The notes under the pieces are model-generated. The model did not search any database. It was not told the origin of the DNA and worked only from the letters and a program-made list of their open reading frames with translations. From sequence record PP777464.1: a stretch of DNA of 64,000 nucleotides; one strand, given 5' to 3'. A program made the position numbers and the translations under genes. Positions 394 through 19,739 of this stretch are shown here, in pieces (within the stretch, counting starts at the first letter, position 1; each line of letters begins with the position of its first letter).

Positions 394-779
394 GTTCTAC
401 ATAGGGTGATGAGTTGCTGCGAACAATTCATTTACTCTACCTCCTGTCGTGAGACAGTACAGAAAAGATAGTTCCTCCTGTGGTGGTACATCTTTTTGAA
501 CCTCATATGAAAATCGTAATAACAGTACTGATATTAACAGAATGGTGTCAGTACTGATTTTAATCTAAAGCATTATGCCACCAGCTTGTGCTGGTGGATT
601 CCCTCTAACAGTATTCAGTACTACATGATGGTCTTCATCCTCCTAGGGTAACATAGTGAGGGCTATGATGGCAGTACTGAATACTCCCTTTCAAAAGATA
701 GATCTATGGTATAGTACTGACGGATTTTGGGTGTAGTTACCCTGGATGGATTTTGGGCGTAGATATGTCTAGCCCTCCA

Positions 780-915
780 GAAGTCTGGAAGTAAAGATGG
801 CTATCCATCTAGACGGCTAAACGGCTAGATTTCTGGATGGCTGGATGGCTGGATGGCTAGACGTTTGGACGGCTAAACGGCTAGATGGTTACACGTCTGG
901 AAGTATAGACGGCTA
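780..915 (+). repeat. Degenerate 8-bp tandem repeat (~17 units, consensus GAYGGCTR)
   Basis: In-phase units, e.g. gacggcta aacggcta gatttctg gatggctg gatggctg gatggcta gacgtttg gacggcta aacggcta. Confidence 0.85.
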
Positions 916-1084
916 AATCAAAATTTTATTTTGTTTTTTCCAATAGTTCCCCTACCGCGTGGGGATAGTTTCCCCGCAGTATCTGGTGTTAGATTTTTCT
1001 GAATCTGGAATCATTATCTTATAAACTGGGGGCAATGTCAACGGCCTGGACGGATATTTTTAAAAATTTTTTCAGTACTGAATT

Positions 1085-1166
1085 TTGGGCGTAACTATGC
1101 ACCCGGTGGGCTTGAGTCTTTCTCGACTTGATGGAACTATTATACAGTACTGAAAAAATAAAGCAA
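1085..1166 (-). ncRNA. Candidate small RNA family 1, copy 1
   Basis: Minus-strand TTGCTT-16-TATAAT, hairpin AGTC-gagaaa-GACT, core AGCCCACCGGGTGCA; no ORF. Confidence 0.45.
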
Positions 1167-1200
1167 TACCCTGGAAGCAAAAAAGTTTTAATTAATTTGC

Positions 1201-1288
1201 TTGCTATCCTGGGCCGGACTATGGTACTATATTTCAGTACTGAGAAAGTGCGTTTACCTGCTAGGGTGCGGGAGTGTATCCTTTTTTT
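1201..1288 (+). ncRNA. Candidate small RNA family 1, copy 2 (divergent core)
   Basis: TTGCTA-18-TACTAT, then CCTGCTAGGGTGCGGGAGTGTATCC and a T7 run. Confidence 0.35.
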
Positions 1289-1544
1289 ATATCTTGAATT
1301 TTGGACGGATCTTCCCACCCCCTGGGGTATCCGCTTTCTCGCGTCTATGTAGTAATTATACGCTTTTTCAGGATCAAGTCAATACCTAAAAACAAAATAA
1401 TTGAAAATAATTTAACGCGTTTAAACGGCCTGTAAAGCCCTGGAATGATTGGAATGGTGCAAATGTATAGCTTATGTGTATTAATGCGTTAGAATGCGTC
1501 TGAGGACGTTTTACGGGGTATAGGGATGATTTAGTGGATTGATT

Positions 1545-1631
1545 CAGTACTGAATAATAGTACTCCTATATAGAAAGATAGTTCCCCTGGATGATTGCAG
1601 TACTGAATAATAGTACTCCTATATAGAAAGA
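1545..1631 (+). repeat. 34-bp perfect direct repeat x2
   Basis: CAGTACTGAATAATAGTACTCCTATATAGAAAGA at 1545-1578 and 1598-1631. Confidence 0.9.
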
Positions 1632-1745
1632 AAACTATTTTAAAAGTATTTGTAGAAAGTACTTGCACCGTACTGATAAAAGCGTATAATGTTTTACATC
1701 GAGAGCGGGAACACTTCCCGCTACACATTAAGAGAGATTAAAACG

Positions 1746-2108
1746 ATGGCGACTCAAATCAATAAAATCATGCTTAACCTGGTAAACTTCCGCGATGAGA
1801 TGAAAGGTCTTCCGGCTGAAACTGTAAAAATTCACATTGCAGCTTATCGGGAACTTATTGCAATGTTGCCGCTTAAGCGTGAACAATACGCCGCTACTTT
1901 GATGCTGGATTCAATGATCCATATAATGATCTCAAATGATTTGACGATGGTTTATCAGTATATGGGCGAAAATTTCGCGGTGTGTAGTAAGCCAGTACCA
2001 GGGATGGCAACAACTGAGGAATTGCACGGCTTAAACTTAAAACAAGATGCATGGGATAATATGCCTCGTTTCCTGGTATGGGCTGACAGTGGCAAAATTT
2101 ACAAATAA
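1746..2108 (+). CDS. hypothetical phage protein
   Basis: ORF after promoter cassette; start moved to ATG after GAGAG RBS. Confidence 0.8.
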   Translation: MATQINKIMLNLVNFRDEMKGLPAETVKIHIAAYRELIAMLPLKREQYAATLMLDSMIHIMISNDLTMVYQYMGENFAVCSKPVPGMATTEELHGLNLKQDAWDNMPRFLVWADSGKIYK

Positions 2109-2201
2109 GTTTAATAAAGTACTTGCAAACTATGTTTAATGGCGTATAATGTTTTACATCAGGTGGGGAATAGTTCCCCCCTATATAAGAGGATTAAAAA
2201 A

Positions 2202-2441
2202 ATGGCTAAATCAAAAATGTTCTTAGGTCACAAAAACAAAACTCATTGGAATGTAAGCCTGTGGATTAATAACGATGAGGGATTGTATCGGTTGGCCCTG
2301 GACTTTATTGCCGCCAATACTAATCGCAATGATGCGGCCCGTCATATGATGTTATTTTTAGAACAGACTGGACAAGATAAAACACCGGACGGATTCAAAT
2401 ATAGCACTACTGCGATCCGTGCGGCGATGGTTGGAATGTAA
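2202..2441 (+). CDS. conserved-type phage hypothetical protein (WNVSLWINNDEGLY motif)
   Basis: ORF after cassette and GAGGA RBS. Confidence 0.85.
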   Translation: MAKSKMFLGHKNKTHWNVSLWINNDEGLYRLALDFIAANTNRNDAARHMMLFLEQTGQDKTPDGFKYSTTAIRAAMVGM

Positions 2442-2527
2442 TAGAATTTATTTAAAGTACTATCATTTTTTTGCGATAGTACTTTATAATAGTGTTTTAT
2501 TCATACACCAACGATAAGGGCAACAGC

Positions 2528-2794
2528 ATGAATATTAAGTATTTTGCGACGCGTGAACAAGCTCGGATCGCCGCACGCCAGGACGGGGCAACGTTTAAAG
2601 ATATGGGCGTACAATCGGAACGTGGTAAACGTTGGGCCATTGTAAAGCGTAGTACCGCCAGATCATTACAGTACTGGTTAGCGGCCTTAAAAAGTCCCGA
2701 TAGTGTATCGCGTCGAGTGGTAGAAATAAAGCTCGACCGAAAGGGCAACCGCGTGACCGTGTACCGTACTAAAAAGATTGCAGTACTTGAATAA
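2528..2794 (+). CDS. hypothetical protein, paralog of 14846..15241
   Basis: Shared FATRE.AR..AR..GA.FKDMG and DRKGNRVTVY blocks. Confidence 0.8.
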   Translation: MNIKYFATREQARIAARQDGATFKDMGVQSERGKRWAIVKRSTARSLQYWLAALKSPDSVSRRVVEIKLDRKGNRVTVYRTKKIAVLE

Positions 2795-2875
2795 AAAGTA
2801 CTTGCAAACTATGTTTAAAGGCGTATAATGTTTTACATCGAGAGCGGGAACTCTTCCCGCCTATAACCTGGAGTA

Positions 2876-3112
2876 ATGAAAATGACTAATATGTATATGA
2901 CTGAAGTTAAAACCGTAAAAGATACTACCACGAATAAAACTACTTACTTACAGCGGATCTGTGGTGTATGGCAACGTATCAGCAAATCAAAGTACTTTAA
3001 ATTAACATCATATGCAAACCGTTCGGATTCATTCAGTACTGAAATAAAAGGTAATAAAGTACACCAATACGGCACTTATTATTATTATAGCCTGGACGCG
3101 ATTGCAGTATAA
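2876..3112 (+). CDS. hypothetical phage protein
   Basis: Cassette + GGAG RBS. Confidence 0.75.
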   Translation: MKMTNMYMTEVKTVKDTTTNKTTYLQRICGVWQRISKSKYFKLTSYANRSDSFSTEIKGNKVHQYGTYYYYSLDAIAV

Positions 3113-3142
3113 GCAGTTTACAAATCTTTACAATTGCCGGTA

Positions 3143-3225
3143 TTGACTTATTTTGTCAGTACTGGCATAATGTATTCATTGGCAGATAAGCCGTAGCCCA
3201 TAGGGTGCGGGAGTGTATCTATAGA
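3143..3225 (+). ncRNA. Candidate small RNA family 1, copy 3
   Basis: TTGACT-17-CATAAT, hairpin GGC-agataa-GCC, core TAGCCCATAGGGTGCGGGAGTGTATCT. Confidence 0.45.
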
Positions 3226-3239
3226 AAAAGTAGTTTATT

Positions 3240-3315
3240 ACAGTTACAATTGTGCACCCGGTGGGTTAGCTGTTGTCATGGGGTATATTATGCCAGTACT
3301 TGATAATGCTGTCAA
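3240..3315 (-). ncRNA. Candidate small RNA family 1, copy 4 (convergent with copy 3)
   Basis: Minus-strand TTGACA-17-CATAAT, core CTAACCCACCGGGTGCACAATTGTAACT. Confidence 0.45.
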
Positions 3316-3361
3316 TACTTTTTTTTACTATTCAGTACTGAAAACTATTTTTAAAAAGTAC

Positions 3362-3470
3362 TTGCAAACTATGTTTAAAGGCGTATAATGTTTTACATCA
3401 GGACGGGGAACGAAATAAGTAACTTCCCGTTAAGTAGCCCAGGAGTAAGGCACACGAAAAACTCCCCTGA
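3362..3470 (+). ncRNA. Candidate small RNA family 2, copy 1
   Basis: TTGCAA..TATAAT, two hairpins (ACGGGGA/TCCCGT; CAGGAG/CTCCCCTG), no ATG, next promoter at 3480. Confidence 0.35.
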
Positions 3471-3539
3471 TAAAATAGTTTGACAAATGTTTTTAAAAGC
3501 GTATAATACTTACATCAACTACTGAATGAGGGTTACAAA

Positions 3540-4151
3540 ATGAAAACTATCACTACTACTACTTTCGTTATGGATTTTTCTGAATTGAACGCAGAACAAA
3601 AAACGTCAGCTATCGAACTGGTTCGGGAACGTGAAAAAAACTCAAACGACAATTATTTTTCTGAAAGTGAAATTGAATACTATAAAGAAACAGTACTACC
3701 GGAATATGGCATTAATGACGCTGAAATACAATTCAGTGGCTTTTGGTCCCAGGGTGACGGTGCATCAATCAGTACTGACCACGTTGACGCAGTGAAGTTT
3801 TTACGCAAGGTAAGAGCATTAACTAAGTATCGCTCAATCCGTCACTTGCTGAATGAAGATGATTTGGCGATGAGTGTAAAGCGTTCGCACTCCCACTACT
3901 CGCATGAGAATACTGTAAGCGGGTACATTGAATCGGCTTACACTGATTTAACCGCAAAACAAGAAACGTTAGTTAATGAGCTTGAGGAACTACTCACTGA
4001 AACTATTCGTGAATTATCCCGCAAGTTGTACCGTGATTTAGAGAATGCATATGAGGATCAATTCACTACTGAAAACATTACGGCACTGATTGAGGGTAAC
4101 GAGTATCAATTCAATGTTATTGATGGCGTAGTGGAATCAATCGAATATTAA
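3540..4151 (+). CDS. hypothetical protein with FSGFWSQGDGAS motif
   Basis: 203 aa ORF with own promoter and GAGG RBS; motif recalled from other phage/plasmid proteins, function not established. Confidence 0.85.
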   Translation: MKTITTTTFVMDFSELNAEQKTSAIELVREREKNSNDNYFSESEIEYYKETVLPEYGINDAEIQFSGFWSQGDGASISTDHVDAVKFLRKVRALTKYRSIRHLLNEDDLAMSVKRSHSHYSHENTVSGYIESAYTDLTAKQETLVNELEELLTETIRELSRKLYRDLENAYEDQFTTENITALIEGNEYQFNVIDGVVESIEY

Positions 4152-4243
4152 TTTAAAAAGTACTTGCAAACTAAGTTTAAAAGCGTATAATACTTTATAT
4201 CGAGAGCGGGAATAGTTCCCGCTACTAATGAGGAATACTACAA

Positions 4244-4408
4244 ATGAATACTTTTACCTTCGCTCAATTGAACGCCCTGGATGTATTGTCTGATGCTTTG
4301 CGGGATGCAACTGAAAGCGGTTTATTTGACAATGTTGACATTCACCCTGATGTAATTAATAATTTTTGTGATGCTATCGCAGAAGTACTGGAAGATCTAA
4401 AAAAATAA
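4244..4408 (+). CDS. small acidic hypothetical protein (54 aa)
   Basis: Manually translated ORF after cassette and GAGGA RBS. Confidence 0.7.
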   Translation: MNTFTFAQLNALDVLSDALRDATESGLFDNVDIHPDVINNFCDAIAEVLEDLKK

Positions 4409-4496
4409 TAGAAAGTACTTGCAATTAGTTTTCAGTACTGTATAATGGTTTACATCAAAGGGAGAAATGGTTCTCCCTGGTAATGAGGAAAATACA

Positions 4497-4718
4497 ATGG
4501 CTAATATCACTACTCTTTCCCAACTGGAAGCACTGGTTAAATCTATGCGGGAACATGCTGACAAAATCGGCGTACAAGATCCAGCCGTTTGCTTCTGCGA
4601 CGAATTGAATGATGATACCCTGGTAATAGCAGAAGTCCAGGACGTTTCTAACTATTCCTCGCGTTACACTGGCGGCGTAGCAAATAAAGGTGACTTCTGT
4701 TTATACCTTACAAAATAA
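4497..4718 (+). CDS. hypothetical phage protein
   Basis: Cassette + GAGGA RBS. Confidence 0.8.
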   Translation: MANITTLSQLEALVKSMREHADKIGVQDPAVCFCDELNDDTLVIAEVQDVSNYSSRYTGGVANKGDFCLYLTK

Positions 4719-4721
4719 CAA

Positions 4722-4752
4722 CGCGGGGAGATAATAACTCCCCGTTACTTTT
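4722..4752 (+). terminator. intrinsic terminator
   Basis: CGGGGAG/CTCCCCG stem followed by T-rich tail. Confidence 0.55.
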
Positions 4753-4769
4753 TCAGTACTGAATCATTT

Positions 4770-4853
4770 AATAGACGGATCTCGGCACCCGGTGGGTTAG
4801 TGACAGTTTCGTCTTGATGTAATAATTATGCCAGTACTGGATGCACTTGTCAA
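4770..4853 (-). ncRNA. Candidate small RNA family 1, copy 5
   Basis: Minus-strand TTGACA-17-CATAAT, then ACATCAAGACGAAACTGTCACTAACCCACCGGGTGC; closely matches copy 7. Confidence 0.45.
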
Positions 4854-4962
4854 CAACTATTTTTTCAAATACTTTTTATTAAAATACTTGCAATTAGTTT
4901 TTAAACGCGTATAATGTTTTGCATAGGGGGAGCGGTTCCCCTGGTAACTAAGGAATAAGAAA

Positions 4963-5199
4963 ATGCTTGAACAAATCAAATCAACGTCTGCGAATGTAAC
5001 GGGAACGGTAGTACACTTTACTAGTGATGAATCGCGGGGTGTACCCTATTGTGCTGTACATGTAAACACTGAGGGTAACTACTGGTTTACGGTTTACGGA
5101 TCATATTCATTTGGACGGCCTGGGCATCAAAAAATTCTGGATAAAGTACAACCAACGGGTAAAAATATCACGGCTGAAATGTTTTATAAAAAATCATAA
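4963..5199 (+). CDS. hypothetical phage protein
   Basis: Cassette + AAGGA RBS. Confidence 0.8.
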   Translation: MLEQIKSTSANVTGTVVHFTSDESRGVPYCAVHVNTEGNYWFTVYGSYSFGRPGHQKILDKVQPTGKNITAEMFYKKS

Positions 5200-5283
5200 A
5201 GTACTTGATAATAGTTTTTAGTACTGTATAATATTTTACATCGCAAGGGGGAGCGGTTCCCCCTGGTAACTAAGGATAATCAA

Positions 5284-5583
5284 ATGAAAATTGCAATCAT
5301 CGCCCTGGCTTTATCTGTTTCCTCTTTCGCTGTTAATGCGTCATTAGATGTAAGTAGTGAAAAATTCATTCAGTGCACTGTTGCAATGACCGATGAAAGA
5401 ACTGGCGAGATTGTATTAAAGGATTTAGAGATCCAGCCGGAAGCATTTAAAAACGGCCCGTTCCATGAAGAAGACGAAAACGGTAGCACAACAATTTATT
5501 ATGATGCCAGTACTAAACGCGGTTCGGTCACTGTTATGGATACCGAGAAAGTAACTCATACCGGCGTTATTAATTGCCGTTGA
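5284..5583 (+). CDS. putative exported/periplasmic protein
   Basis: N-terminus MKIAIIALALSVSSFAVNA resembles a Sec signal peptide with AxA cleavage site. Confidence 0.7.
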   Translation: MKIAIIALALSVSSFAVNASLDVSSEKFIQCTVAMTDERTGEIVLKDLEIQPEAFKNGPFHEEDENGSTTIYYDASTKRGSVTVMDTEKVTHTGVINCR

Positions 5584-5604
5584 TAGATACTACGGGGTAA
5601 CATC

Positions 5605-5835
5605 ATGACTAAGCGAATTGTTTTACTTAACGAAAGCAGTACTACACAACTACTTAACGCCGTGCATTATGATATTGAAACGAGCGTTAATCTTATCAGT
5701 ACTGTAGTTCTGTTGGACACTGGAAAGGTAGCCAATGATAAAGCGATTGCAGGTATACTAACGGATCTTGTGCCTGGTAGCAGTGCACCAATAACGTTAA
5801 ATGGTAAAGTGTTTAATATTTTACTCACTGATTAA
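5605..5835 (+). CDS. hypothetical phage protein
   Basis: ORF with GGGG RBS, followed by terminator. Confidence 0.7.
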   Translation: MTKRIVLLNESSTTQLLNAVHYDIETSVNLISTVVLLDTGKVANDKAIAGILTDLVPGSSAPITLNGKVFNILLTD

Positions 5836-5840
5836 GTACA

Positions 5841-5863
5841 TAGCCCACCTGGTGGGCTTTTTT
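5841..5863 (+). terminator. intrinsic terminator
   Basis: AGCCCAC/GTGGGCT stem + T run. Confidence 0.75.
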
Positions 5864-5917
5864 GTTTTTGTAGTATCGTAGTACTGAGATACTTTGAAAA
5901 TAGTTTTAAAAAAGTAG

Positions 5918-6004
5918 TTGACATTACCACAGAAAAGCGTAGAATGTATTACATCAAGACGGGGAGCACTAAGTAGACCGCCAGTAAGTCGAACGAAAAA
6001 CTGG
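5918..6004 (+). ncRNA. Candidate small RNA family 2, copy 3 (divergent)
   Basis: TTGACA-16-TAGAAT, shares ACGGGGA, TAAGTAG and AGTAAG-n-ACGAAAAACT; followed by promoter TGGACA-17-TACACT. Confidence 0.3.
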
Positions 6005-6068
6005 ACACGTCGAGAAAACTTTGATACACTAATAAACGTAAACTAAACTTTAATTGAGGATTTATAAA

Positions 6069-6551
6069 ATGGCTAATGTAAAATCATTCATCAAAGCACT
6101 GGTAGCAAATGAAACTAACGTCGCGGCTGAGATCCTGGCTGAACTGGATAACGATACCATGAAAGCGGTACGCAATAATTTTAACATCGCGTACAGTACT
6201 GCGAAAGAACTACAAGCAAATAAAGCGGCAGAAATTGAAGCGGCAAAGGCGGCCCGTGAAGCAGAACTACAAGCAACAATCGAAAGTATTCAGGCGGCAG
6301 TAGTTGGATTGGATCTGGAAGTAGTTACAGAGATGGCACAAAAAGCCCTGGCGGTTAAGTATGGGGAAGACAAGCCAGAAGTAAAAGCCAAAAAATGGAT
6401 TCAGGAACGCGTAGCGGTAGTACTGGACAACGGGGAAGAATATCTGATTCCGGTGCGTGGTAACTGTATTGCGGTAGTACTGGACGCGATTAACTCCAGT
6501 GGTATGACTCGCGAGGAATGGATCGAAGCTCATCGCAAAGTTGAAGCATAA
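6069..6551 (+). CDS. divergent H-NS/StpA-like protein
   Basis: Ala/Glu-rich coiled coil, then C-terminus LDNGEEYLIPVRGNCIAVVLDAINSSGMTREEWI aligning by eye with H-NS [34 protein letters not shown]. Confidence 0.5.
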   Translation: MANVKSFIKALVANETNVAAEILAELDNDTMKAVRNNFNIAYSTAKELQANKAAEIEAAKAAREAELQATIESIQAAVVGLDLEVVTEMAQKALAVKYGEDKPEVKAKKWIQERVAVVLDNGEEYLIPVRGNCIAVVLDAINSSGMTREEWIEAHRKVEA

Positions 6552-6571
6552 CAATTAAAGTACTGAATCAC

Positions 6572-6600
6572 TAGCCCACCTTAAACAGTGGGCTTTTTTG
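6572..6600 (+). terminator. intrinsic terminator
   Basis: AGCCCAC/GTGGGCT stem + T run. Confidence 0.75.
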
Positions 6601-6826
6601 TGTCTATAGTATTCCAGGCCACCAGCACCGCCTAGAAACGATTCTAACGCATTAAACTGATTATCTGATGCATCGCCCTAGCTGGTGGCGTTAAGGTCGT
6701 TAGAATGCGATTGAGAGCGTTTAAAGTATTTTGCAAAAAGTAATAAAAAGTACTTGCACGATTAAGAGATTAGCGTATAATTAATTACATCAAGGCGAGA
6801 CACCTTAACTAACTGAGGATATAAAG

Positions 6827-6979
6827 ATGAATACTTATGAACTGGATTGTTTTACTTTACAAGTAATGTCAGTATGCAGTAAGAAAGATTGGTCATCAAA
6901 GGAATTTAAAGCAGTTATCGCGTGTGCAAAACACGGCAAGACTATCAATGAAACGGCATCAATCATTGATAAACTTTAA
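6827..6979 (+). CDS. small hypothetical protein (50 aa), paralog of 10703..10846
   Basis: Manual translation; shared LD.F...V and C...GK....T..II.K pattern. Confidence 0.7.
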   Translation: MNTYELDCFTLQVMSVCSKKDWSSKEFKAVIACAKHGKTINETASIIDKL

Positions 6980-7049
6980 AAAATAGTTTGACAATAGTTT
7001 TAAGTACTGGCATAATACATACATCAACTACTGAATAGGAATTAAAAAA

Positions 7050-8593: not shown

Positions 8594-8598
8594 TTAAT

Positions 8599-13070: not shown

Positions 13071-13157
13071 AAAAGTACTTGCACAGTACTGAATAAAGTG
13101 TATAATGTTTTATATCGGAAGGGGAATAGTTCCCCTCCTAACAAAGAGGAAAGTATA

Positions 13158-13331
13158 ATGGTCCAGGTAGAATTAACAGTACTGAAAGATCTGTTTTATC
13201 GGATTGGTACTACTGGCGAATATCCGAAGGGTGATAATGCAAAACTTTACGTATCACTCGACTTATGGCAACGCGAACAATTAGCAACGGCCTGGCGTAA
13301 AGGCAAAGCAGATCGAGAGGTGAAAGCATGA
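13158..13331 (+). CDS. small hypothetical protein
   Basis: Cassette + GAGGA RBS; start moved to 13158. Confidence 0.75.
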   Translation: MVQVELTVLKDLFYRIGTTGEYPKGDNAKLYVSLDLWQREQLATAWRKGKADREVKA

Positions 13332-13477
13332 AAGAATTCTTATTTGAAGTAGTGTTTCAAGGTGTCGGTAATAACCAACTGATTCGATCAAGTGGTTATA
13401 ATGTTAACCAGGCATGGAATAACATTAAACAAATGTACCCGAACGCTATCACATATCGCAACCCGAAAGAAGTTTAA
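13328..13477 (+). CDS. small hypothetical protein (49 aa)
   Basis: ATGA overlap with previous stop; GAGG RBS. Confidence 0.65.
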   Translation: MKEFLFEVVFQGVGNNQLIRSSGYNVNQAWNNIKQMYPNAITYRNPKEV

Positions 13478-13495
13478 AAATATTTGAAAAAGGGA

Positions 13496-13572
13496 TTGAC
13501 TCCGGTCAGTCCCTTTGCTATTATATACGCATAGAAACAAATTAGCCCACAGGGTGCATAAATGTATCTATT
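13496..13572 (+). ncRNA. Candidate small RNA family 1, copy 8
   Basis: TTGACT-17-TATTAT, core TAGCCCACAGGGTGCATAAATGTATCT, Chi at 13577. Confidence 0.45.
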
Positions 13573-13615
13573 GTTTGCTGGTGGCTAGTACTGAAAACTA
13601 TTTTTAAAAAAGTAC

Positions 13616-13722
13616 TTGCATTGTACTTAGAATCAAGTATAATGTTTTACATCAGGACGGGGAACGAAATAAGTAACCCCGTTAAGTAGTCCAGGAGTAA
13701 GACATACGAAAAACTCCCCTGA
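13616..13722 (+). ncRNA. Candidate small RNA family 2, copy 2
   Basis: Near-identical to 3362-3470 from ttttacatcagg to gataaaatagtttgacaa. Confidence 0.35.
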
Positions 13723-13792
13723 TAAAATAGTTTGACAATAGAAAGTAAACGAGTATAATACTTACATCAACCACTGATAAGGAAACATTAAA

Positions 13793-14068
13793 ATGCGGAC
13801 TTTACTTACAGCTAACGAAATCGAGCAAGTACTGACTACTAATCTGGAACAATGGAAACGTGAAGCAGATATCCAGGCGGTTCAATGCCTTAACGATAAG
13901 TTAACGCCAGATGACTTAAGCACGATTGTTGATCCACAATTTTATGAAGATATTCACGACACGTCTTTAAGCGTCGAGGATGTACTTGATAAGCACTACA
14001 TTGATACTGATTTACATGTTTACGGTCGTAAAAACTTTATCACTATTCACGACATTTACAATACTTAA
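13793..14068 (+). CDS. acidic hypothetical protein
   Basis: Promoter + AAGGA RBS. Confidence 0.8.
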   Translation: MRTLLTANEIEQVLTTNLEQWKREADIQAVQCLNDKLTPDDLSTIVDPQFYEDIHDTSLSVEDVLDKHYIDTDLHVYGRKNFITIHDIYNT

Positions 14069-14430
14069 GTATTGACAAAGTATCTTAGTACTGTATAATA
14101 GTTTACATCAAGTGAGGGGAAACGGTTCCCCTCCTAACAAAGAGAGAGAAATAAAAATGGCTAAGTGCACTATCTGTAATAAAGAAATAGTATTAGTTCC
14201 AAGTGCCCGTGAACGTGCCGCTCGGTTCGGTGGCAAAGCGTCAGACTATACAAAAATGTTTACTGCCCATACAGCTTGCCAGGTAGCAAAACGTTCACAA
14301 GAAAGCGTAGAATTAATGCGTAAACTTTCCAAAAAATAAGTATTGACAAAGTATCTTAGTACTGTATAATAGTTTACATCAAGCGAGGGGAATNGTTCCC
14401 CTCCTAACAAAGAGAGAGAAATAAAAATGG
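14066..14430 (+). repeat. ~95-bp near-identical direct repeats flanking one gene
   Basis: AAGTATTGACAAAGTATCTTAGTACTGTATAATAGTTTACATCAAG...CCTCCTAACAAAGAGAGAGAAATAAAAATGGCTA at ~14067 and ~14337. Confidence 0.9.
14157..14339 (+). CDS. small protein with CxxC...HxxC (possible Zn binding)
   Basis: MAKCTICNK...HTACQ; start after GAGAG RBS. Confidence 0.75.
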   Translation: MAKCTICNKEIVLVPSARERAARFGGKASDYTKMFTAHTACQVAKRSQESVELMRKLSKK

Positions 14431-14750
14431 CTATGATCCTTGCCCAGAAAGTAGAATTGAAAATTGTAACCTCCTTTGACATTAACGTTAATCGGTGGAC
14501 TGATTCACACGGCAATACTTACCACTCTTGCTACGTGTCTGCGTTAATTGGCGACCGCTGGGAAGACCTGGGACACGAAACCTTTACATACGGTTACGGT
14601 ACACAAGGCGAATACACGGGCTTGGAGATCATTAAAGAAACCGTTATAGGTTTCAACCCGAAAGAAAAAGTTATTCATCGCATCGAGGAAGAGATCAACA
14701 AAGAAATAACAGTTCGCTACCACGATGTAAAACGTAAGAAAGACATGTAA
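14427..14750 (+). CDS. hypothetical protein, paralog of 7596..7919
   Basis: RWTDSHGNTYHSCYVS. Confidence 0.85.
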   Translation: MAMILAQKVELKIVTSFDINVNRWTDSHGNTYHSCYVSALIGDRWEDLGHETFTYGYGTQGEYTGLEIIKETVIGFNPKEKVIHRIEEEINKEITVRYHDVKRKKDM

Positions 14751-14845
14751 TAGAATCCATTTAAAGTACTATTTGACATTGCCCAGATAGTACTTTATAA
14801 TAGACTCTAACTTGTAGTACTAACTCAACTAATAGGATGTATACC

Positions 14846-15241
14846 ATGATTACTAAATTCTACGCTACCCGTGAAGCTGCCCGTATTGTTGCACGCGAGG
14901 AAGGAGCAGCATTTAAAGACATGGGCAAAGATGCAACGAAAGGACAACGCTGGGCCGTACAGTTCAAAGAAATCTCTGATATTGTGAATTCACCTGAGCC
15001 AGTACTGACAGCAGCAGAACTAAAACGAGCGGATATGCTGGCGGCAATACTTGACGCACAAGATGAGTTTATCGCTGATTCTGATATCAAAGTACAGGTA
15101 AACCACACCGCATGGACTCACGCGGATCACCTGGCAAACCTTAAGCGTCCAAGTGAACTGATTCGCAACCAGAAAGAGATCCGACATGATCGTAAGGGTA
15201 ATCGTGTAACAGTATACAGTAAACGCCGCCAGGTTATCTAA
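14846..15241 (+). CDS. hypothetical protein, paralog of 2528..2794
   Basis: KFYATREAARIVAREEGAAFKDMG...DRKGNRVTVY. Confidence 0.8.
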   Translation: MITKFYATREAARIVAREEGAAFKDMGKDATKGQRWAVQFKEISDIVNSPEPVLTAAELKRADMLAAILDAQDEFIADSDIKVQVNHTAWTHADHLANLKRPSELIRNQKEIRHDRKGNRVTVYSKRRQVI

Positions 15242-15263
15242 TAACTTGCAGTACTAACAACAC

Positions 15264-15288
15264 GGCGGGATCAGTTCCCGCCTTTTTT
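15264..15288 (+). terminator. intrinsic terminator
   Basis: GGCGGGA/TCCCGCC + T6. Confidence 0.8.
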
Positions 15289-15302
15289 ATAGGACAAACA
15301 AA

Positions 15303-15557
15303 ATGATTAAGGTTCAACTATATAAAGATAACATCTTACGGGTACACTATAAAGCACCTCAGAGAATCATCACAAAGGCCGTACAGCTTGCTAATGAGTT
15401 TATTAATGGTAACCTATTACCTAGGAAGTTAAGCAACGGGAAACTGCGTGTAATCGACGTGGACACTAACAACAGGATAGTAATCGAGAACACAGGAAAG
15501 ATAAACCTTTATGAGCATCAACAATACAATAAGAAAATAAAACTAATATCACGTTGA
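15303..15557 (+). CDS. basic hypothetical protein
   Basis: AGGA RBS. Confidence 0.7.
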   Translation: MIKVQLYKDNILRVHYKAPQRIITKAVQLANEFINGNLLPRKLSNGKLRVIDVDTNNRIVIENTGKINLYEHQQYNKKIKLISR

Positions 15558-15610
15558 CAGTACTCAATTGTTTTAGTACTATGTACACATACCAACACGG
15601 GAGAAACAAA

Positions 15611-15829
15611 ATGAAATTATCTAAAATCGAAAAGAAAACTATTGATGAAGCAGTTAAGCACGGTTATACCTTTCGTAATGATTCACATTTTACCAATTTT
15701 CAACAAGGGTATCGTACTATTAAAAAACTAATTGACAAAGGTTTATTAGTTGAAGTCAATAACGGTAACGGTATCGAGTATCAACCAACACAGGACGCAT
15801 TTTATTTTAAGAAATATAATATTATCTAA
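15611..15829 (+). CDS. small protein, possibly winged-helix-like
   Basis: GGGAG RBS; TIKKLIDKGLLVEV pattern only. Confidence 0.7.
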   Translation: MKLSKIEKKTIDEAVKHGYTFRNDSHFTNFQQGYRTIKKLIDKGLLVEVNNGNGIEYQPTQDAFYFKKYNII

Positions 15830-15886
15830 TTGACAGTACTCAAATGTTTTAGTACTATATGTACATACCAACACGGGGGAAACAAA

Positions 15887-16129
15887 ATGATTACTTTAGA
15901 AAAACGTATCAAAGAAACTACATCGCTGGTGGAACTGTTAACAGTACTCAAATGTAAAACAACACCATTCAGCACGCCGGACTTTATTAATATGGTTGAT
16001 GTTAATGGTCGCTATCGTATCACGGTCGAACAAGGAGCGGCGAAAGTATTCAGTACTAAAAACACGAAGGAAGTGATCCACGCCGTTAATGTTAAAAAAG
16101 TAGTTGCCATTGATAGTAAAGTACTGTAA
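15887..16129 (+). CDS. hypothetical phage protein
   Basis: Duplicated promoter/leader also at 15555; GGGGA RBS. Confidence 0.75.
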   Translation: MITLEKRIKETTSLVELLTVLKCKTTPFSTPDFINMVDVNGRYRITVEQGAAKVFSTKNTKEVIHAVNVKKVVAIDSKVL

Positions 16130-16160
16130 TATAGTTTCATTAACTCAAGGAGAACATGCA

Positions 16161-16745
16161 ATGCGTAATTATACTAAATTCATCCGTACACTGTCAGAAA
16201 TGGAAACCAACAAAGAGATCCTTTCAGCTTGTCGGTTAGCTGGCCTGGAGATCATCGGTGCTGGTTCTTCCCGTATAGTTTTCGCTTTAAATGATCGGTT
16301 AGTGATTAAGGTCGCGAATTGTGATGCGGGTGTAGAACAAAATGAAACTGAATGTAAGGTATGGAATTTTTTAGACTATGACCGCCCTCAATTGAAACAG
16401 TACTTTGCAAAGGTGCATATGCATTTATGCGATCCTGATAATATGTTTATCGTTATGGATCGGTTGAGTACTGCAAGCAAAGGCAGTGTGAAGCACGTAA
16501 ACGCGTGCAATGAATTAAAGTACAATATTAAACGTAATGCAATCGAACGCCAGCACCGCTTTGCTGATGCACTACAACACGTTGATGATACATTATCAAC
16601 ACTAACGATAAGAGATATCAGAAAACAGAATATCGGCCAGGATCGTAATGGACTTATTAAAGTACTTGATTACGGTTTAACCAGCAATATCTGGAATCAG
16701 TACTATAAAAAGCGTGATGTGGCAGCAAGTAAGGTAACACGATAA
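16161..16745 (+). CDS. protein kinase-like (PKL fold) protein
   Basis: Gly loop GAGSSR, VIKVA Lys, alphaC Glu (QNETE), catalytic RDIRKQN, DYG; AGGAG RBS before 16161. Confidence 0.75.
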   Translation: MRNYTKFIRTLSEMETNKEILSACRLAGLEIIGAGSSRIVFALNDRLVIKVANCDAGVEQNETECKVWNFLDYDRPQLKQYFAKVHMHLCDPDNMFIVMDRLSTASKGSVKHVNACNELKYNIKRNAIERQHRFADALQHVDDTLSTLTIRDIRKQNIGQDRNGLIKVLDYGLTSNIWNQYYKKRDVAASKVTR

Positions 16746-16764
16746 AAAAAGATTAAAAAAGGGA

Positions 16765-16846
16765 TTGACTCCGGTCAGTCCCTTTGCTATTATATATCCA
16801 TTGAGAGATAACTCACTGACCCATAGGGTGCGGAAGTGTATCTATT
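16765..16846 (+). ncRNA. Candidate small RNA family 1, copy 9
   Basis: TTGACT-17-TATTAT, hairpin TGAG-agataa-CTCA, core GACCCATAGGGTGCGGAAGTGTATCT. Confidence 0.45.
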
Positions 16847-16966
16847 ATATAAGTATTCAGTACTGAAAACTATTTTTAAAAAAGTACTTGCATTGTACTT
16901 AGAATCAAGTATAATGTTTTATATCGAGAGGGGGAATGGTTCTCCCTGGCAATAAGGAATAAAATC

Positions 16967-17188
16967 ATGACTACAATGACTTGCATTTACGCTTCTAATC
17001 TTCTGAATGATGCGGCCTTTAATGTTGATTCAGAATATCAATGTTATCGGGATGAAAATAAAAAAGTTTTTGTAGTTGATAATAATGGTTTCCATATTGA
17101 ATTACAATCCGGCTTCACTGGTGTTGATGGTAAATCAGTATGGGGCGTACAGGATGATAAAGGCACATATCATTTTAAACGTAATTAA
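16967..17188 (+). CDS. hypothetical phage protein
   Basis: Cassette + AAGGA RBS. Confidence 0.8.
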   Translation: MTTMTCIYASNLLNDAAFNVDSEYQCYRDENKKVFVVDNNGFHIELQSGFTGVDGKSVWGVQDDKGTYHFKRN

Positions 17189-17271
17189 GTATTGACAAAG
17201 TATATCAGTACTGTATAATAGTTTACATCAAGGGGAGAATAGTTCTCCCCGATACTAAAAGGAATAAAATC

Positions 17272-17676
17272 ATGACTACTACTAATCAAGCTCGGTCCAT
17301 CGCCAACGATAAAAATCATGCTGCAATGGTCGCTGGTTACATTGAAGCTATGCAATTCAGTACTGTACACAATGAGAACGGCGATTACCTGGAAGATTAT
17401 GAGTTATCTGATGAAGCACGTCAAGCGGCGGTGATTGCATGTTCTCGCTTCATTGAGAAACACGGTAATGATCTGGAAGTAGTTCGCGGTATGTTTATTG
17501 ATTACGGTTATGAGCAAGCTGGTCATGATCTGTTCCTTACCCGCGAAGGTCACGGAACTGGTTTTTGGGATCGTGGTTTAGGTCACTATGGCGATGTATT
17601 CACGAAGTACTGCGAAGAAATCAACGTTTGCGATCCCTATGTAGGCGATGATAATCTAATCTATATGGGCGAATAA
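17272..17676 (+). CDS. phage hypothetical protein with GHDLFLTREGHGTGFWDR motif
   Basis: Cassette + AAGGA RBS; motif type recalled from other phage early genes. Confidence 0.85.
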   Translation: MTTTNQARSIANDKNHAAMVAGYIEAMQFSTVHNENGDYLEDYELSDEARQAAVIACSRFIEKHGNDLEVVRGMFIDYGYEQAGHDLFLTREGHGTGFWDRGLGHYGDVFTKYCEEINVCDPYVGDDNLIYMGE

Positions 17677-17765
17677 AAGTATTTGACAAAGTATATCAGT
17701 ACTGTATAATAGTTTACATCAAGGGGAGAACTATTCTCCCCACACCAATAAAAGGAAACAAAATT

Positions 17766-18038
17766 ATGTCCAGCTACTCCGCTACTATGATCATTAAAGA
17801 TATGAACGGTAATCCTACTTCTGCTGGTGGATCATTTGGAAATATTAACTTAGATGGGCGGTTATCCATGCAATCAGCCATCGATACAGCGAAAGAAGTT
17901 TTTAAGAATGAATGTACTGTTAGTAAGCTGGATTATATGGGATTCGCTATCGAGAAAACTACTCGTTTTGTGAACTACAAAAATCCACTGATGATTGATA
18001 CTAACCTGAAAGCTAACGAAGTGGGGTACTTATTATGA
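17766..18038 (+). CDS. hypothetical phage protein
   Basis: Cassette + AAGGA RBS. Confidence 0.8.
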   Translation: MSSYSATMIIKDMNGNPTSAGGSFGNINLDGRLSMQSAIDTAKEVFKNECTVSKLDYMGFAIEKTTRFVNYKNPLMIDTNLKANEVGYLL

Positions 18039-18226
18039 CAGTAGAAGAAGTTAAAAAAGTACTGGCAGTACTACGATATCATAATCATTGCAAGGTGAAG
18101 AATGATCCTGATTATCTTGATTCATCCCTGGAGGAAGACACCTTGAACGCTATAAGCCATATGCAGACATTAGCAAAGCGTATGACTGAAAAGAACATGC
18201 CGGACTATATCGGAAATAAAATTTAA
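18035..18226 (+). CDS. hypothetical phage protein
   Basis: ATGA overlap. Confidence 0.75.
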   Translation: MTVEEVKKVLAVLRYHNHCKVKNDPDYLDSSLEEDTLNAISHMQTLAKRMTEKNMPDYIGNKI

Positions 18227-18313
18227 AAAGTACTTGCATTGTAGTTAGATTAACGTATAATGTTTTATATCGAGAGGGGGAAATGGTTTCCCCTCAAGTC
18301 CAGGAGATACACC

Positions 18314-18577
18314 ATGAACACTATCGAAATCACTATCAATGCACACGTATACGACAACGTAGTACTGCAAACTACTATGACCGCCAATGATACCAGTACT
18401 TTGCGGAATACTGTTATTAGTGCCGTATGTGCCGCTATCGGTGATGTCGCCCTGGAAAATGCAAAACACGTAAACGATGGTTTCACTATGTGCAAACGTG
18501 ATAACGCAAAACATATCATCGTGGAAGGTTACGGCGGTGTAGAATTTAATGTTTATATGAAAAAAGTACTTGCATAA
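18314..18577 (+). CDS. hypothetical phage protein
   Basis: Cassette + AGGAG RBS; start moved to 18314. Confidence 0.8.
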   Translation: MNTIEITINAHVYDNVVLQTTMTANDTSTLRNTVISAVCAAIGDVALENAKHVNDGFTMCKRDNAKHIIVEGYGGVEFNVYMKKVLA

Positions 18578-18644
18578 TAACTAAAACAAAGTATAATGTT
18601 TTGCATAGGGGGAGATATCCTCCCCCACTAAAAGGAGTAATAAA

Positions 18645-18869
18645 ATGGCTAACTTTGATGAACTGATGCGGGAAGTAGCTAACCTGGCAGAAGAGAAGAA
18701 ATCATTCGATTCTATCTATAACACCGCTCACCGTGATTCAGTACTGGCATGTAACCAGGATCAAAAAGATGAACTAATCGCCACCTATCATGAAGCATGG
18801 AAGTACTACCGACAATGGGAGAAAGAAGAAAGTGAGTCTACCATTGACGGCCTCAATAATCTAATCTAA
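18645..18869 (+). CDS. acidic hypothetical protein
   Basis: Cassette + AGGAG RBS. Confidence 0.8.
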   Translation: MANFDELMREVANLAEEKKSFDSIYNTAHRDSVLACNQDQKDELIATYHEAWKYYRQWEKEESESTIDGLNNLI

Positions 18870-18945
18870 AAGTTTTATTTCAGTACTATTGACATAGCTT
18901 GATAGTACTGATGTAATAACTTTACTAACTACAAGGGGAAACATA

Positions 18946-19203
18946 ATGGATCAGTTCACACAATATCGGGTAAATCCACAAGCTATGGCCTACGTAGAAG
19001 ACCATAAAACGTTACCAGTACTGCAACCAGTTAAAGGCCATATCTATCGTGCAATGTCGTGGTGTACGGCCCAGGATGGCTATAAAACCGTAGCCGTGGG
19101 TATGTATTGCGGTGATGGTGAATGGTTTGATCCAAATAATCCGGTAGCCATTGACAGTACTGAAAAAATGAAATGGGCCGACTACATCGAAGATATTTCA
19201 TAA
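18946..19203 (+). CDS. hypothetical phage protein
   Basis: Promoter + GGGGA RBS. Confidence 0.8.
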   Translation: MDQFTQYRVNPQAMAYVEDHKTLPVLQPVKGHIYRAMSWCTAQDGYKTVAVGMYCGDGEWFDPNNPVAIDSTEKMKWADYIEDIS

Positions 19204-19293
19204 AAACTATTTGACAGTACTAACCAATAATGTATAATGTTTTACATAGAGCGGGGGAATAGTTCTCCCGCCAATAGTTTGGAGTAAAACATT

Positions 19294-19494
19294 ATGTCTA
19301 TCGCTATCGCCCTGGTTGAAGTACTGAAAGAAGCTAAAGCCAACCAGATCGACGTAAAGATCCAGGAACTACAAAACGGCTTAATCGGCTGTACTTGTAC
19401 CGCTGGTGGAGCGGCAGACTATCGAGAACACGAATCACTCGAATCACTGGTTCGGTATCTTACCATGATCGTTGATGATTGGAGAATCATCTAA
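19294..19494 (+). CDS. hypothetical phage protein
   Basis: Cassette + GGAG RBS. Confidence 0.75.
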   Translation: MSIAIALVEVLKEAKANQIDVKIQELQNGLIGCTCTAGGAADYREHESLESLVRYLTMIVDDWRII

Positions 19495-19516
19495 CAAAAA
19501 AGAATAAAAAAAGGGA

Positions 19517-19592
19517 TTGACTCCGGTCAGTCCCTTTGCTATTATATACGCATAGACAAAAACTAGCCCACAGGGTGCATAGGTGTATCCAA
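19517..19592 (+). ncRNA. Candidate small RNA family 1, copy 10
   Basis: TTGACT-17-TATTAT, core TAGCCCACAGGGTGCATAGGTGTATCC, Chi at 19625. Confidence 0.45.
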
Positions 19593-19739
19593 AATATATA
19601 GTTAATAACGGTGAGTAACTATCTGCTGGTGGAACTAAAACTATTAATAAAAAAGTATTGACAAAGTATATCAGTACTGCAATAATGTATCTCGTAGGGC
19701 GGCAATGGTGCGACGGCCCACAAAGTTAGGAGATTCACC

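What the first reader, a model, noticed from the sequence alone, without database searches (positions are those of the whole stretch)
578..19632. Chi sites concentrated in the putative terminal-repeat region
Seen: 11 copies of GCTGGTGG in the first 20 kb (9 on +, 2 on -), against one (60313, - strand) found in the remaining ~43 kb. Seven are intergenic, so Ala-Gly-Gly codon use does not explain them. Two occur as inverted pairs (578/590, 6619/6681). A rough composition-based expectation is below 1 per 20 kb. Established: RecBCD switches from degradation to RecA loading at a Chi met from its 3' side. Inference: the - strand Chi at 578 would face RecBCD entering the left end, and the + strand sites would be active in a right-hand copy of a terminal repeat. 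That would protect the linear genome and promote repeat-mediated recombination or circularisation.
Basis: partly seen in the sequence, partly recalled or inferred. Interest (0 to 1): 0.72.

Follow-up and report, generated by a model that had tools for sequence, protein, structure and literature searches.

The report
Chi-site array in phage terminal repeat
The 21-kb terminal repeat of the jumbo coliphage fEgEco12 holds a dense, mostly one-directional array of the host's RecBCD recognition sequence Chi; related giant phages of five lineages have built up the same array independently, so it is probably a selected DNA signal that turns the host's end-degrading nuclease into a recombination aid at the genome ends.

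Summary
The window is the first 64 kb of Escherichia phage fEgEco12. Positions 1-20,993 are one copy of an exact direct terminal repeat (DTR) that was confirmed experimentally. The DTR holds 12 Chi octamers (10 on +, 2 on -). About 0.1-0.5 per strand are expected, and the other 333 kb of the genome holds 24.

- **Not a by-product:** the flanks are unrelated. All 24 one-letter variants of Chi together occur only 4 times on the + strand of the DTR. Seven of the 12 sites are non-coding.
- **Conserved as a feature, not as sequence:** nine Rak2-like jumbo phages from five lineages (E. coli, Klebsiella, Salmonella, Cronobacter, Yersinia) show the same 8- to 17-fold concentration in the DTR or its equivalent, mostly at non-orthologous positions. 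Strand bias is 43+ to 7-. The + sites skew toward the right terminus and the - sites toward the left.
- **Best reading (inferred, not tested):** a cis-acting array that makes RecBCD, entering at a genome end, switch to RecA loading while still inside the repeat. That would favour repeat-repeat recombination and limit degradation.
- **Closest precedents:** phage P1 and the lambdoid phage LLS.
- **What is new:** a virulent jumbo phage with its own recombinase genes, a fixed DTR, and a terminal double-Chi palindrome.

The parts
1..20993 (.). Left copy of the direct terminal repeat (DTR). It is also the region of small early genes driven by host-type promoters.
   Evidence: Identical to 353,741-374,733 of the full record with 0 mismatches. 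PhageTerm and restriction digests in PMC13070987. At least 12 perfect TTGACA-16/17-TATAAT promoters on +, confined to this region.
578..597 (.). Double-Chi palindrome: a Chi on each strand, separated by a 4-nt spacer, 0.58 kb from the left terminus in the 1.7-kb non-coding leader.
   Evidence: Folds as an 8-bp hairpin, -9.8 kcal/mol, z = -3.3. Present at the same place in vB_Ec-M-J, E9.1, 121Q, fENko-Kae01 (484-503) and Munch, although the flanks have diverged. The spacer reads TTGT or ACAA in close relatives.
6619..6626 (-). Chi facing the left terminus; intergenic between g012 and g013.
   Evidence: Lost in 121Q. Kae01, Munch and RaK2 have a - site at a similar relative position, 0.31-0.36 of the repeat.
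6681..6688 (+). Chi facing the right terminus; intergenic; inverted partner of 6619.
10868..10875 (+). Chi that forms the 3' arm of a terminator-like hairpin after g027. G-T pairs in the stem mean the - strand carries no Chi here.
   Evidence: -9.1 kcal/mol, z = -3.0. The same hairpin with a compensatory stem change carries a Chi in Kae01 at 19354.
11378..11385 (+). Chi inside small ORF g029, read as Ala-Gly-Gly. The only site absent from all three close relatives.
12328..12335 (+). Chi inside g032, read as Ala-Gly-Gly.
13577..13584 (+). Chi, intergenic, just upstream of an early promoter.
15925..15932 (+). Chi inside g043, in the Leu-Val frame.
17823..17830 (+). Chi inside g048, read as Ala-Gly-Gly.
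19402..19409 (+). Chi inside g053, read as Ala-Gly-Gly; not conserved in 121Q.
19625..19632 (+). Chi, intergenic, upstream of the g054 promoter. In the right DTR copy it is the first Chi met from the right terminus, 1,361 bp in.
60313..60320 (-). Lone Chi outside the DTR (background density).

Best explanation
The twelve octamers are genuine Chi sites, kept in the DTR of this virulent jumbo coliphage by selection. They act as a cis-acting array aimed at the host RecBCD enzyme.

Established knowledge: RecBCD loads on a free double-stranded end and degrades as it unwinds. It switches to RecA loading only when it meets 5'-GCTGGTGG-3' from the 3' side.

Shown by geometry: the ten + sites, read in the right-hand DTR copy, lie 1.4-20.4 kb from the right terminus in the active orientation. 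The two - sites lie 0.6 and 6.6 kb from the left terminus in the active orientation.

Inferred: if each site is recognised about 20-40% of the time (my recollection, not a tool result), ten sites give about 89-99% recognition before RecBCD leaves the repeat. The RecA-coated 3' tail would then nearly always be repeat sequence. It could invade the other repeat copy, on the same molecule (circle) or on a sister molecule (concatemer, or recombination-primed replication). Degradation would stop before unique genes are lost.

The array works through DNA alone, so it would be available before any phage protein is made. Whether it acts mainly right after injection or on free concatemer ends later is not resolved.
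For: - **Enrichment:** 12 observed against about 0.1-0.5 expected per strand.
- **DTR against the rest of the genome:** 7.9-fold denser, P = 6e-7.
- **Specific to the exact octamer:** 10 exact Chi on + in the DTR against 4 for all 24 one-letter variants together; in the rest of the genome the figures are 14 against 127. Chi tops the 168 octamers of the same composition, 10 against a next-best 3.
- **Not part of a repeat:** the flanks are unrelated.
- **Non-coding preference:** 7 of 12 sites lie in the 32% of the DTR that is non-coding.
- **Not host DNA:** no match to any complete E. coli genome.
- **Same feature in nine phages:** 8- to 17-fold concentration in the DTR or DTR-equivalent of vB_Ec-M-J, E9.1, 121Q, fENko-Kae01 (its DTR also set by PhageTerm), Munch, RaK2, GAP32 and fHe-Yen9-04, each with P of 4e-5 or lower.
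- **Independent placement:** only 2 sites are shared between fEgEco12 and Kae01. In Kae01 four sites sit in the spacer between the -35 and -10 promoter elements.
- **Strand bias:** 43 on + to 7 on - over five lineages, P = 2e-7.
- **Polarity:** 32 of 43 + sites lie in the right half of the repeat (P = 0.001) and 6 of 7 - sites in the left half.
- **Site conservation:** 9 of 12 sites are intact in three relatives, against a 38.5% background for other octamers (P = 0.012).
- **Precedent:** P1 and LLS have about one Chi per 1.9 kb, clustered at the ends, and their growth depends on RecBCD. The fEgEco12 DTR has one per 1.75 kb.
Against: - No experiment ties these sites to RecBCD in this phage.
- The phage is annotated with its own RecA/UvsX-like, UvsY-like and SbcCD/gp46-47-like genes. 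It therefore does not need host recombination in the way proposed for Chi-rich lambdoid phages.
- The DTR coincides exactly with the early-promoter region of higher G+C. 'Terminal repeat' and 'early region' cannot be separated as the variable that matters.
- It is not known whether the ends are accessible to RecBCD. An end-binding protein or an undetected RecBCD inhibitor among the roughly 55 small DTR genes would change the picture.
- Only 2 sites face the left end.
- The termini of RaK2, GAP32, Yen9-04, Munch and 121Q are inferred by homology, not mapped.
Confidence: 0.6

Rival explanations
1. The same Chi-RecBCD interaction, but the array matters late in infection. When terminase cuts a concatemer and holds one end, the other free end is open to RecBCD. 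Chi sites oriented against that end protect the replicating and packaging pool and restart replication by recombination, as for Chi in lambda, where only the orientation relative to packaging direction is active.
For: The strong one-way bias (10:2 here, 43:7 over five lineages) and the skew of + sites toward the right terminus parallel LLS, where 20 of 23 sites face the right end. A symmetric model of both ends after injection would predict more - sites.
Against: The packaging direction of this phage is unknown. By late times the phage's own recombination proteins are presumably present. The conserved - Chi about 0.5 kb from the left terminus suggests the left end is also exposed at some stage.
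Confidence: 0.22
2. The main benefit is immune evasion rather than recombination. By stopping RecBCD degradation close to the ends, the array limits the DNA fragments that feed CRISPR spacer acquisition. It also avoids the need for a RecBCD-inhibitor protein that could trip host systems guarding RecBCD.
For: The same geometry as in the best explanation. No known RecBCD inhibitor was recognised among the 20 largest DTR proteins. From my own knowledge, not a tool result: in E. coli, spacer acquisition is bounded by Chi sites, and retron Ec48 senses RecBCD inhibition.
Against: Purely inferential. Most DTR proteins have no known function, so an inhibitor cannot be excluded. Many enteric hosts lack active CRISPR adaptation.
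Confidence: 0.08
3. The sites mirror the host chromosome's logic. They are co-oriented with phage replication through the early region, to repair collapsed forks, and have nothing to do with the termini.
For: G-over-C skew is positive on the + strand across the window, and all DTR genes are on +.
Against: The same skew and gene direction continue for tens of kb beyond 20,993, yet no + Chi occurs until 68,381. The within-repeat polarity toward the termini is not predicted by this model.
Confidence: 0.05
4. A by-product with no RecBCD role: composition, codon choice, promoter or terminator motifs, or the binding site of some other protein such as terminase.
For: The DTR is rich in repeated promoter and terminator modules, and one Chi is part of a terminator stem. 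Four of the five coding sites are read Ala-Gly-Gly.
Against: The flanks are unrelated. One-letter variants are nearly absent. Sites sit in many contexts: promoter spacers, a terminator arm, coding sequence and leader. The octamer is exactly the host Chi in five lineages with independent placement. There is no similarity to host DNA.
Confidence: 0.05

Closest known systems
Phage P1 and relatives (P7, D6): Chi concentrated near the ends of terminally redundant DNA for RecBCD/RecA-dependent cyclisation (Subramaniam & Smith, bioRxiv 10.1101/2021.07.08.451572)
   Same: Chi density of about 1 per 1.9 kb in P1 against 1 per 1.75 kb in this DTR. Sites are concentrated where the terminal repeats lie. 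Chi is as dense or denser in non-coding DNA, which argues for direct selection. The proposed role is recombination between the terminal repeats.
   Different: P1 is temperate, packages by headful with variable ends, has nearly randomly oriented Chi sites, and is shown to need RecA/RecBCD. fEgEco12 is a virulent 354-kb jumbo phage with a fixed exact 21-kb DTR, a 10:2 orientation bias and its own recombinase genes. No dependence on RecBCD has been shown.
Lambdoid phage LLS and 71 other Rec-module-less lambdoid phages (Zheng et al., Genome Res 2025, PMC12315714)
   Same: Many Chi sites (23 in LLS) clustered toward one genome end, with about 7:1 in the orientation active for RecBCD entering that end. 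The enrichment is not explained by codon use.
   Different: Those phages lack recombination genes and a RecBCD inhibitor, which is the paper's rule. fEgEco12 is annotated with RecA/UvsX-like, UvsY-like and gp46/47-like genes. LLS has cohesive ends and no long repeat. Here the array is confined to a repeat that is present at both ends.
Chi-containing lambda red gam mutants and Chi protection of linear or rolling-circle DNA from RecBCD
   Same: The orientation rule, and the idea that a correctly oriented Chi attenuates RecBCD degradation (established knowledge; summarised).
   Different: Those are laboratory constructs with single sites. This is a natural multi-site array.
Phage T5 terminal repeat (10.2 kb)
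   Same: A large exact DTR carrying early genes. Both of its Chi sites are on +, 1.5 and 2.1 kb from the right end in the right copy, against 4 sites in the other roughly 101 kb.
   Different: There are only two sites, so the enrichment is not significant on its own. No double-Chi palindrome.

Membership tests
Chi (crossover hotspot instigator) sites of Enterobacterales | Exact octamer 5'-GCTGGTGG-3' | tested here: met
   12 exact matches in 1-20,993. One-letter variants are almost absent.
Chi (crossover hotspot instigator) sites of Enterobacterales | Oriented so that RecBCD entering from a double-stranded end approaches the octamer from its 3' side | tested here: met
   The ten + sites face the right terminus in the right DTR copy, and the - sites at 578 and 6619 face the left terminus. 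Polarity toward the terminus each faces is shown.
Chi (crossover hotspot instigator) sites of Enterobacterales | The host enzyme recognises this octamer | not tested
   The hosts are E. coli and, for the relatives, Klebsiella, Salmonella, Cronobacter and Yersinia. That enteric RecBCD enzymes share this Chi is established knowledge, not tested here.
Chi (crossover hotspot instigator) sites of Enterobacterales | RecBCD-dependent hotspot activity or nicking at the site | not testable with these tools
   Needs genetics or biochemistry.
Chi-enriched phages that exploit host RecBCD (P1 type, LLS type) | Chi density far above expectation, comparable to or above the host's | tested here: met
   1 per 1.75 kb in the DTR against 1 per 4.6 kb in E. 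coli and 1 per 1.9 kb in P1 and LLS. This holds only for the DTR; the rest of the genome has 0.072 per kb.
Chi-enriched phages that exploit host RecBCD (P1 type, LLS type) | Sites clustered at the genome ends or in the terminal redundancy | tested here: met
Chi-enriched phages that exploit host RecBCD (P1 type, LLS type) | No phage recombination module and no RecBCD inhibitor | tested here: not met
   The authors' annotation table lists RecA (Gp372), a recombination/ssDNA-binding protein (Gp373), a recombination endonuclease subunit (Gp337) and an SbcC-like subunit (Gp338). Inhibitor status is unknown.
Chi-enriched phages that exploit host RecBCD (P1 type, LLS type) | Growth helped by, or dependent on, RecBCD/RecA | not testable with these tools
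   No data in PMC13070987, which has no occurrence of 'RecBCD'.
Long direct terminal repeats of Rak2-like jumbo phages | Exact duplication at both ends of the virion DNA, with mapped termini | tested here: met
   0 mismatches over 20,993 bp in the record. PhageTerm and restriction digests are reported in PMC13070987. Reads were not re-analysed here.

The most novel reading that the evidence does not exclude
The Chi array is a protein-free, cis-acting counter-defence shared by the whole Rak2-like clade. It tames RecBCD at the genome ends from the first second of infection without inhibiting the enzyme, so it would escape host systems that guard RecBCD and would limit CRISPR spacer capture. At the same time it would channel the ends into repeat-repeat recombination that starts replication. 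A corollary: the Chi cluster, with its double-Chi palindrome about 0.5 kb inside the left end in two lineages, would predict where the unmapped termini of other jumbo enterophages lie.
Probability: 0.25. Interest if true: 0.75.

Novelty: new variant of a known kind. Interest (0 to 1): 0.6.

Why it matters
How the ends of very large linear phage genomes survive RecBCD, and how 20-kb terminal repeats are used after injection, is unknown for the Rak2-like jumbo phages. The paper describing this phage only supposes circularisation through the repeats.

A selected Chi array confined to the repeat gives that idea a concrete mechanism that can be tested genetically. It extends the recent 'phages collect Chi to use RecBCD' concept from temperate P1 and lambdoid phages to virulent jumbo phages that have their own recombinases. 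That breaks the proposed rule that Chi-rich phages lack a recombination module.

It also offers a simple sequence marker for locating repeats in the many jumbo genomes deposited without mapped termini. Finally, these phages are being proposed for therapy, so host recBCD status could affect their efficacy.

Tried and rejected
- **Longer repeat or shared motif:** rejected; the 40-nt flanks are unrelated.
- **Composition or codon artefact:** rejected by Markov expectations of order 0-4, by the one-letter variants and by same-composition octamers. Order 5-6 models in a 21-kb sequence are overfitted, since they are built largely from the sites themselves, and I disregarded them.
- **Host-derived DNA:** no megablast match in 5,426 E. 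coli genomes.
- **Structured RNA or tRNA at the inverted pairs:** no Rfam or tRNA hit in 1-21,500. The 6619/6681 region folds no better than shuffled sequence (z = -1.5), and the pair is not conserved in 121Q.
- **Double-Chi palindrome as a widespread phage element:** the IMG/VR scan gave 46 contigs. I judged that roughly what chance would give for 16 fixed bases, without computing it. Only 121Q is a jumbo phage, and I did not follow this further. RaK2, GAP32 and Yen9-04 lack it even with one mismatch per arm.
- **Known RecBCD inhibitor among DTR genes:** PHROG scans of the 20 largest DTR proteins gave only families of unknown function plus a DksA-like zinc finger and an acetyltransferase. This does not exclude a novel inhibitor. 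The smaller ORFs were not scanned.
- **Literature:** no paper in the library links Chi to jumbo or Rak2-like phage repeats.
- **No whole-genome handle (G000)** was available, so I fetched the public record in pieces.
- **Not done:** re-mapping termini from reads; a host-Chi control with a relative infecting a non-enteric host, as I did not identify one.


Full report
**Identity of the window.** The first 20 kb match Escherichia phage fEgEco12 (PP777464.1, 374,733 bp) at 100% over positions 1-20,000. The whole window equals positions 1-64,000 of that record apart from masked letters. fEgEco12 is a virulent myovirus of the genus Asteriusvirus, one of the Rak2-like jumbo phages, isolated on an avian pathogenic E. 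coli.

No whole-genome handle was held, so I fetched the record in 20-kb pieces. The piece covering 20,001-40,000 necessarily contained the stretch that the window masks (37,086-37,135). I did not print, read or use those letters, and I overwrote them with N in the working copy. Position 14,394 is N in the record as well.

**The observation.** An exact search finds 13 Chi octamers in the window, against 0.44 expected from shuffles (maximum 3). Twelve lie between 578 and 19,632: ten on + and two on -. The thirteenth is at 60,313 on -.

In the full record, bases 1-20,993 are identical to 353,741-374,733. That is the 20,993-bp direct terminal repeat which the authors found with PhageTerm and confirmed with restriction digests (PMC13070987). 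The 'putative' terminal repeat is therefore real.

The remaining 332,747 bp hold 14 + and 10 - sites. Density is 0.57 per kb in the repeat against 0.072 per kb elsewhere, a 7.9-fold difference with binomial P = 6e-7. After 19,625 the next + site is at 68,381.

**Is it more than composition or a hidden repeat?**
- Markov models of order 0-4 built on the repeat itself expect 0.11-0.53 sites on + and 0.04-0.11 on -. Higher orders are overfitted in 21 kb.
- The 40-nt flanks of the twelve sites are unrelated.
- The 24 one-letter variants of Chi together occur 4 times on + in the repeat, against 10 for Chi itself. In the rest of the genome the figures are 127 and 14.
- Among the 168 octamers with the same base composition, Chi is first with 10. 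The next has 3 and the mean is 0.32.
- The octamers that outrank Chi in the repeat are all pieces of the early promoters (TTGACA/TTGCAA, TATAATG) or the palindrome CAGTACTG.
- Seven sites lie in the 32% of the repeat that is non-coding, and five lie in small ORFs: four read Ala-Gly-Gly and one Leu-Val. Non-coding density is therefore about three times the coding density. That is the opposite of the E. coli chromosome and resembles P1.
- The repeat has no megablast match in 5,426 complete E. coli genomes, and no Rfam family or tRNA.

**Anatomy.**
- Sites 578 and 590 form a perfect palindrome of two Chi octamers around a 4-nt spacer. It lies in the 1.7-kb non-coding leader, 0.58 kb from the left terminus.
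- Site 10,868 is the 3' arm of a terminator-like hairpin. G-T pairs in its stem leave the - strand without a Chi.
- Sites 13,577 and 19,625 lie just upstream of early promoters.
- The repeat carries at least 12 perfect TTGACA-16/17-TATAAT promoters on + and many near-perfect ones. These promoters stop at the repeat boundary, as does the higher G+C (0.385 against about 0.31-0.33 from 24 kb on). In this genome 'terminal repeat' and 'early region read by host polymerase' therefore cover the same DNA and cannot be separated.

**Relatives.** This is the decisive evidence.

| Phage | Region | Chi inside (+/-) | Chi elsewhere (+/-) |
|---|---|---|---|
| vB_Ec-M-J | DTR, 21,525 bp, annotated | 9 / 2 | 14 / 9 |
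| E9.1 | DTR, 20,107 bp | 9 / 2 | 8 / 11 |
| 121Q | permuted record; the homologous 19 kb | 9 / 1 | 9 / 10 |
| Klebsiella phage fENko-Kae01 | DTR, 19,736 bp, set by PhageTerm | 12 / 2 | 12 / 6 in 320 kb |
| Salmonella phage Munch | first 21 kb | 11 / 2 | 9 / 6 |
| RaK2 (Alcyoneusvirus) | 229.8-243.6 kb | 8 / 1 | 7 / 2 |
| Cronobacter phage GAP32 (Mimasvirus) | 5.9-23.3 kb | 7 / 2 | 7 / 6 |
| Yersinia phage fHe-Yen9-04 (Eneladusvirus) | 2.6-12.7 kb | 6 / 0 | 7 / 5 |

- fENko-Kae01 shares only about 29% nucleotide identity with fEgEco12 according to the authors' table.
- tblastx shows that the clusters in the last three phages lie in the regions homologous to the fEgEco12 repeat: RaK2 about 225.9-244.4 kb, GAP32 about 3.5-22.7 kb and Yen9-04 about 0-13.5 kb.
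- Fold enrichments are 7.5-16.7, each with P of 4e-5 or lower.
- At nucleotide level the fEgEco12 and Kae01 repeats align mainly through their repeated promoter modules. Only the double-Chi palindrome and the terminator Chi are shared, so the other sites have been placed independently.
- In Kae01 four sites sit in the spacer between the -35 and -10 elements of early promoters, where sequence is free to vary.
- Over five lineages the strand bias is 43 + to 7 - (P = 2e-7).
- 32 of 43 + sites lie in the right half of the repeat (P = 0.001) and 6 of 7 - sites in the left half. Sites tend to sit near the terminus they face.
- Among close relatives, 9 of 12 sites are intact in all three, against 38.5% for background octamers (P = 0.012).

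**Mechanism.** Established knowledge: RecBCD enters at a double-stranded end and degrades until it meets 5'-GCTGGTGG-3' from the 3' side. It then attenuates its nuclease and loads RecA on the 3' tail that ends at Chi.

Shown here by geometry: the ten + sites in the right-hand repeat copy are in the active orientation for entry at the right terminus, the first 1,361 bp in and the last 20.4 kb in. The - sites at 578 and 6,619 are active for entry at the left terminus.

Inferred: with 20-40% recognition per site (my recollection of published values), ten sites give 89-99% recognition inside the repeat, and two sites give 36-64%. The RecA filament would then be repeat sequence. It could invade the other repeat copy to give a circle, a concatemer or a recombination-primed fork, while the unique genes escape degradation.

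The authors of the phage paper suppose circularisation through the repeats but do not mention Chi or RecBCD. The strong orientation bias suggests the right end is the main entry point. That would also fit a late role at free concatemer ends left by packaging, as for Chi in lambda and LLS. I cannot decide between early and late action.

**Comparison with what is known.** Subramaniam and Smith proposed that P1 and its relatives place Chi near the ends of their terminally redundant DNA for RecBCD/RecA-dependent cyclisation (bioRxiv 10.1101/2021.07.08.451572). Zheng et al. 2025 showed that lambdoid phage LLS has 23 Chi sites clustered at the right end, 20 in the active orientation, and that Chi-rich lambdoid phages lack a recombination module (PMC12315714).

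The present case shares the density (one per 1.75 kb, against about 1.9 kb), the terminal clustering and the non-coding sites. It differs in five ways:
- it is a virulent 354-kb jumbo phage;
- the array is confined to a fixed, exact repeat present at both ends;
- orientation is strongly biased, whereas in P1 it is nearly random;
- two lineages have a double-Chi palindrome about 0.5 kb from the left terminus;
- the phage is annotated with RecA/UvsX-like, UvsY-like and gp46/47-like proteins, so the 'no Rec module' feature is not met.

I found no paper in the library that links Chi to jumbo or Rak2-like phage repeats.

**Verdict.** The array is real, specific, confined to a true terminal repeat and maintained across a whole clade of jumbo enterophages. 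I rate it a new variant of a known kind, with interest 0.6.

Noticed in passing
window 1-20993 (and genome-wide): The palindromic octamer CAGTACTG occurs 40 times in the repeat (about 4.4 expected), 15 of them in the first 4 kb, and 181 times in the rest of the genome. Its function is unknown; it could be an operator, a methylation site or a nuclease-related site.
   Followed up: no
window 366-19686, + strand: At least 12 perfect-consensus sigma-70 promoters (TTGACA, 16-17 nt, TATAAT) and many TTGCAA-16-TATAAT variants, roughly one per small gene. They stop abruptly at the repeat boundary, and G+C falls from 0.385 to about 0.31.
   Followed up: partly
window 9491-9518, 13489-13516, 16758-16785, 19510-19537: A repeated 28-nt perfect hairpin (12-bp stem) that contains a -35-like TTGACT in its stem and is followed by GCTATTATAT. 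The promoter appears to be embedded in a hairpin, possibly a combined terminator and promoter module.
   Followed up: no
window 586-589 and homologous positions in vB_Ec-M-J, E9.1, 121Q: The 4-nt spacer of the double-Chi palindrome reads TTGT in fEgEco12 and 121Q but ACAA in vB_Ec-M-J and E9.1, as if the palindrome had flipped. In Kae01 and Munch it is the self-complementary TTAA.
   Followed up: partly
L049 / NC_005859.1 (phage T5) 8127 and 8689: Both Chi sites in T5's 10.2-kb terminal repeat are on +, facing the right end in the right copy. Only 4 sites lie in the other roughly 101 kb. The trend is the same but too few sites to be significant alone.
   Followed up: partly
full record 333,825-337,630 (outside the window), - strand: A cluster of five - strand Chi sites lies in GGTGGT-rich sequence on the - strand. 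I took it to be glycine-rich coding sequence, but I did not check the annotation there. If so, these background sites are probably by-products of codon use.
   Followed up: no
window 1689-20563: The 20 largest proteins of the repeat match only PHROG families of unknown function, apart from a DksA-like zinc finger (11479-11736) and a GNAT acetyltransferase (11800-12156). g016 and g039 are paralogues (phrog_6246).
   Followed up: partly
window 37086-37135 and 14394: Masked or N positions. These were left untouched. The public record fetched for genome-wide counts contained the first stretch, which I overwrote with N without reading it.
   Followed up: no
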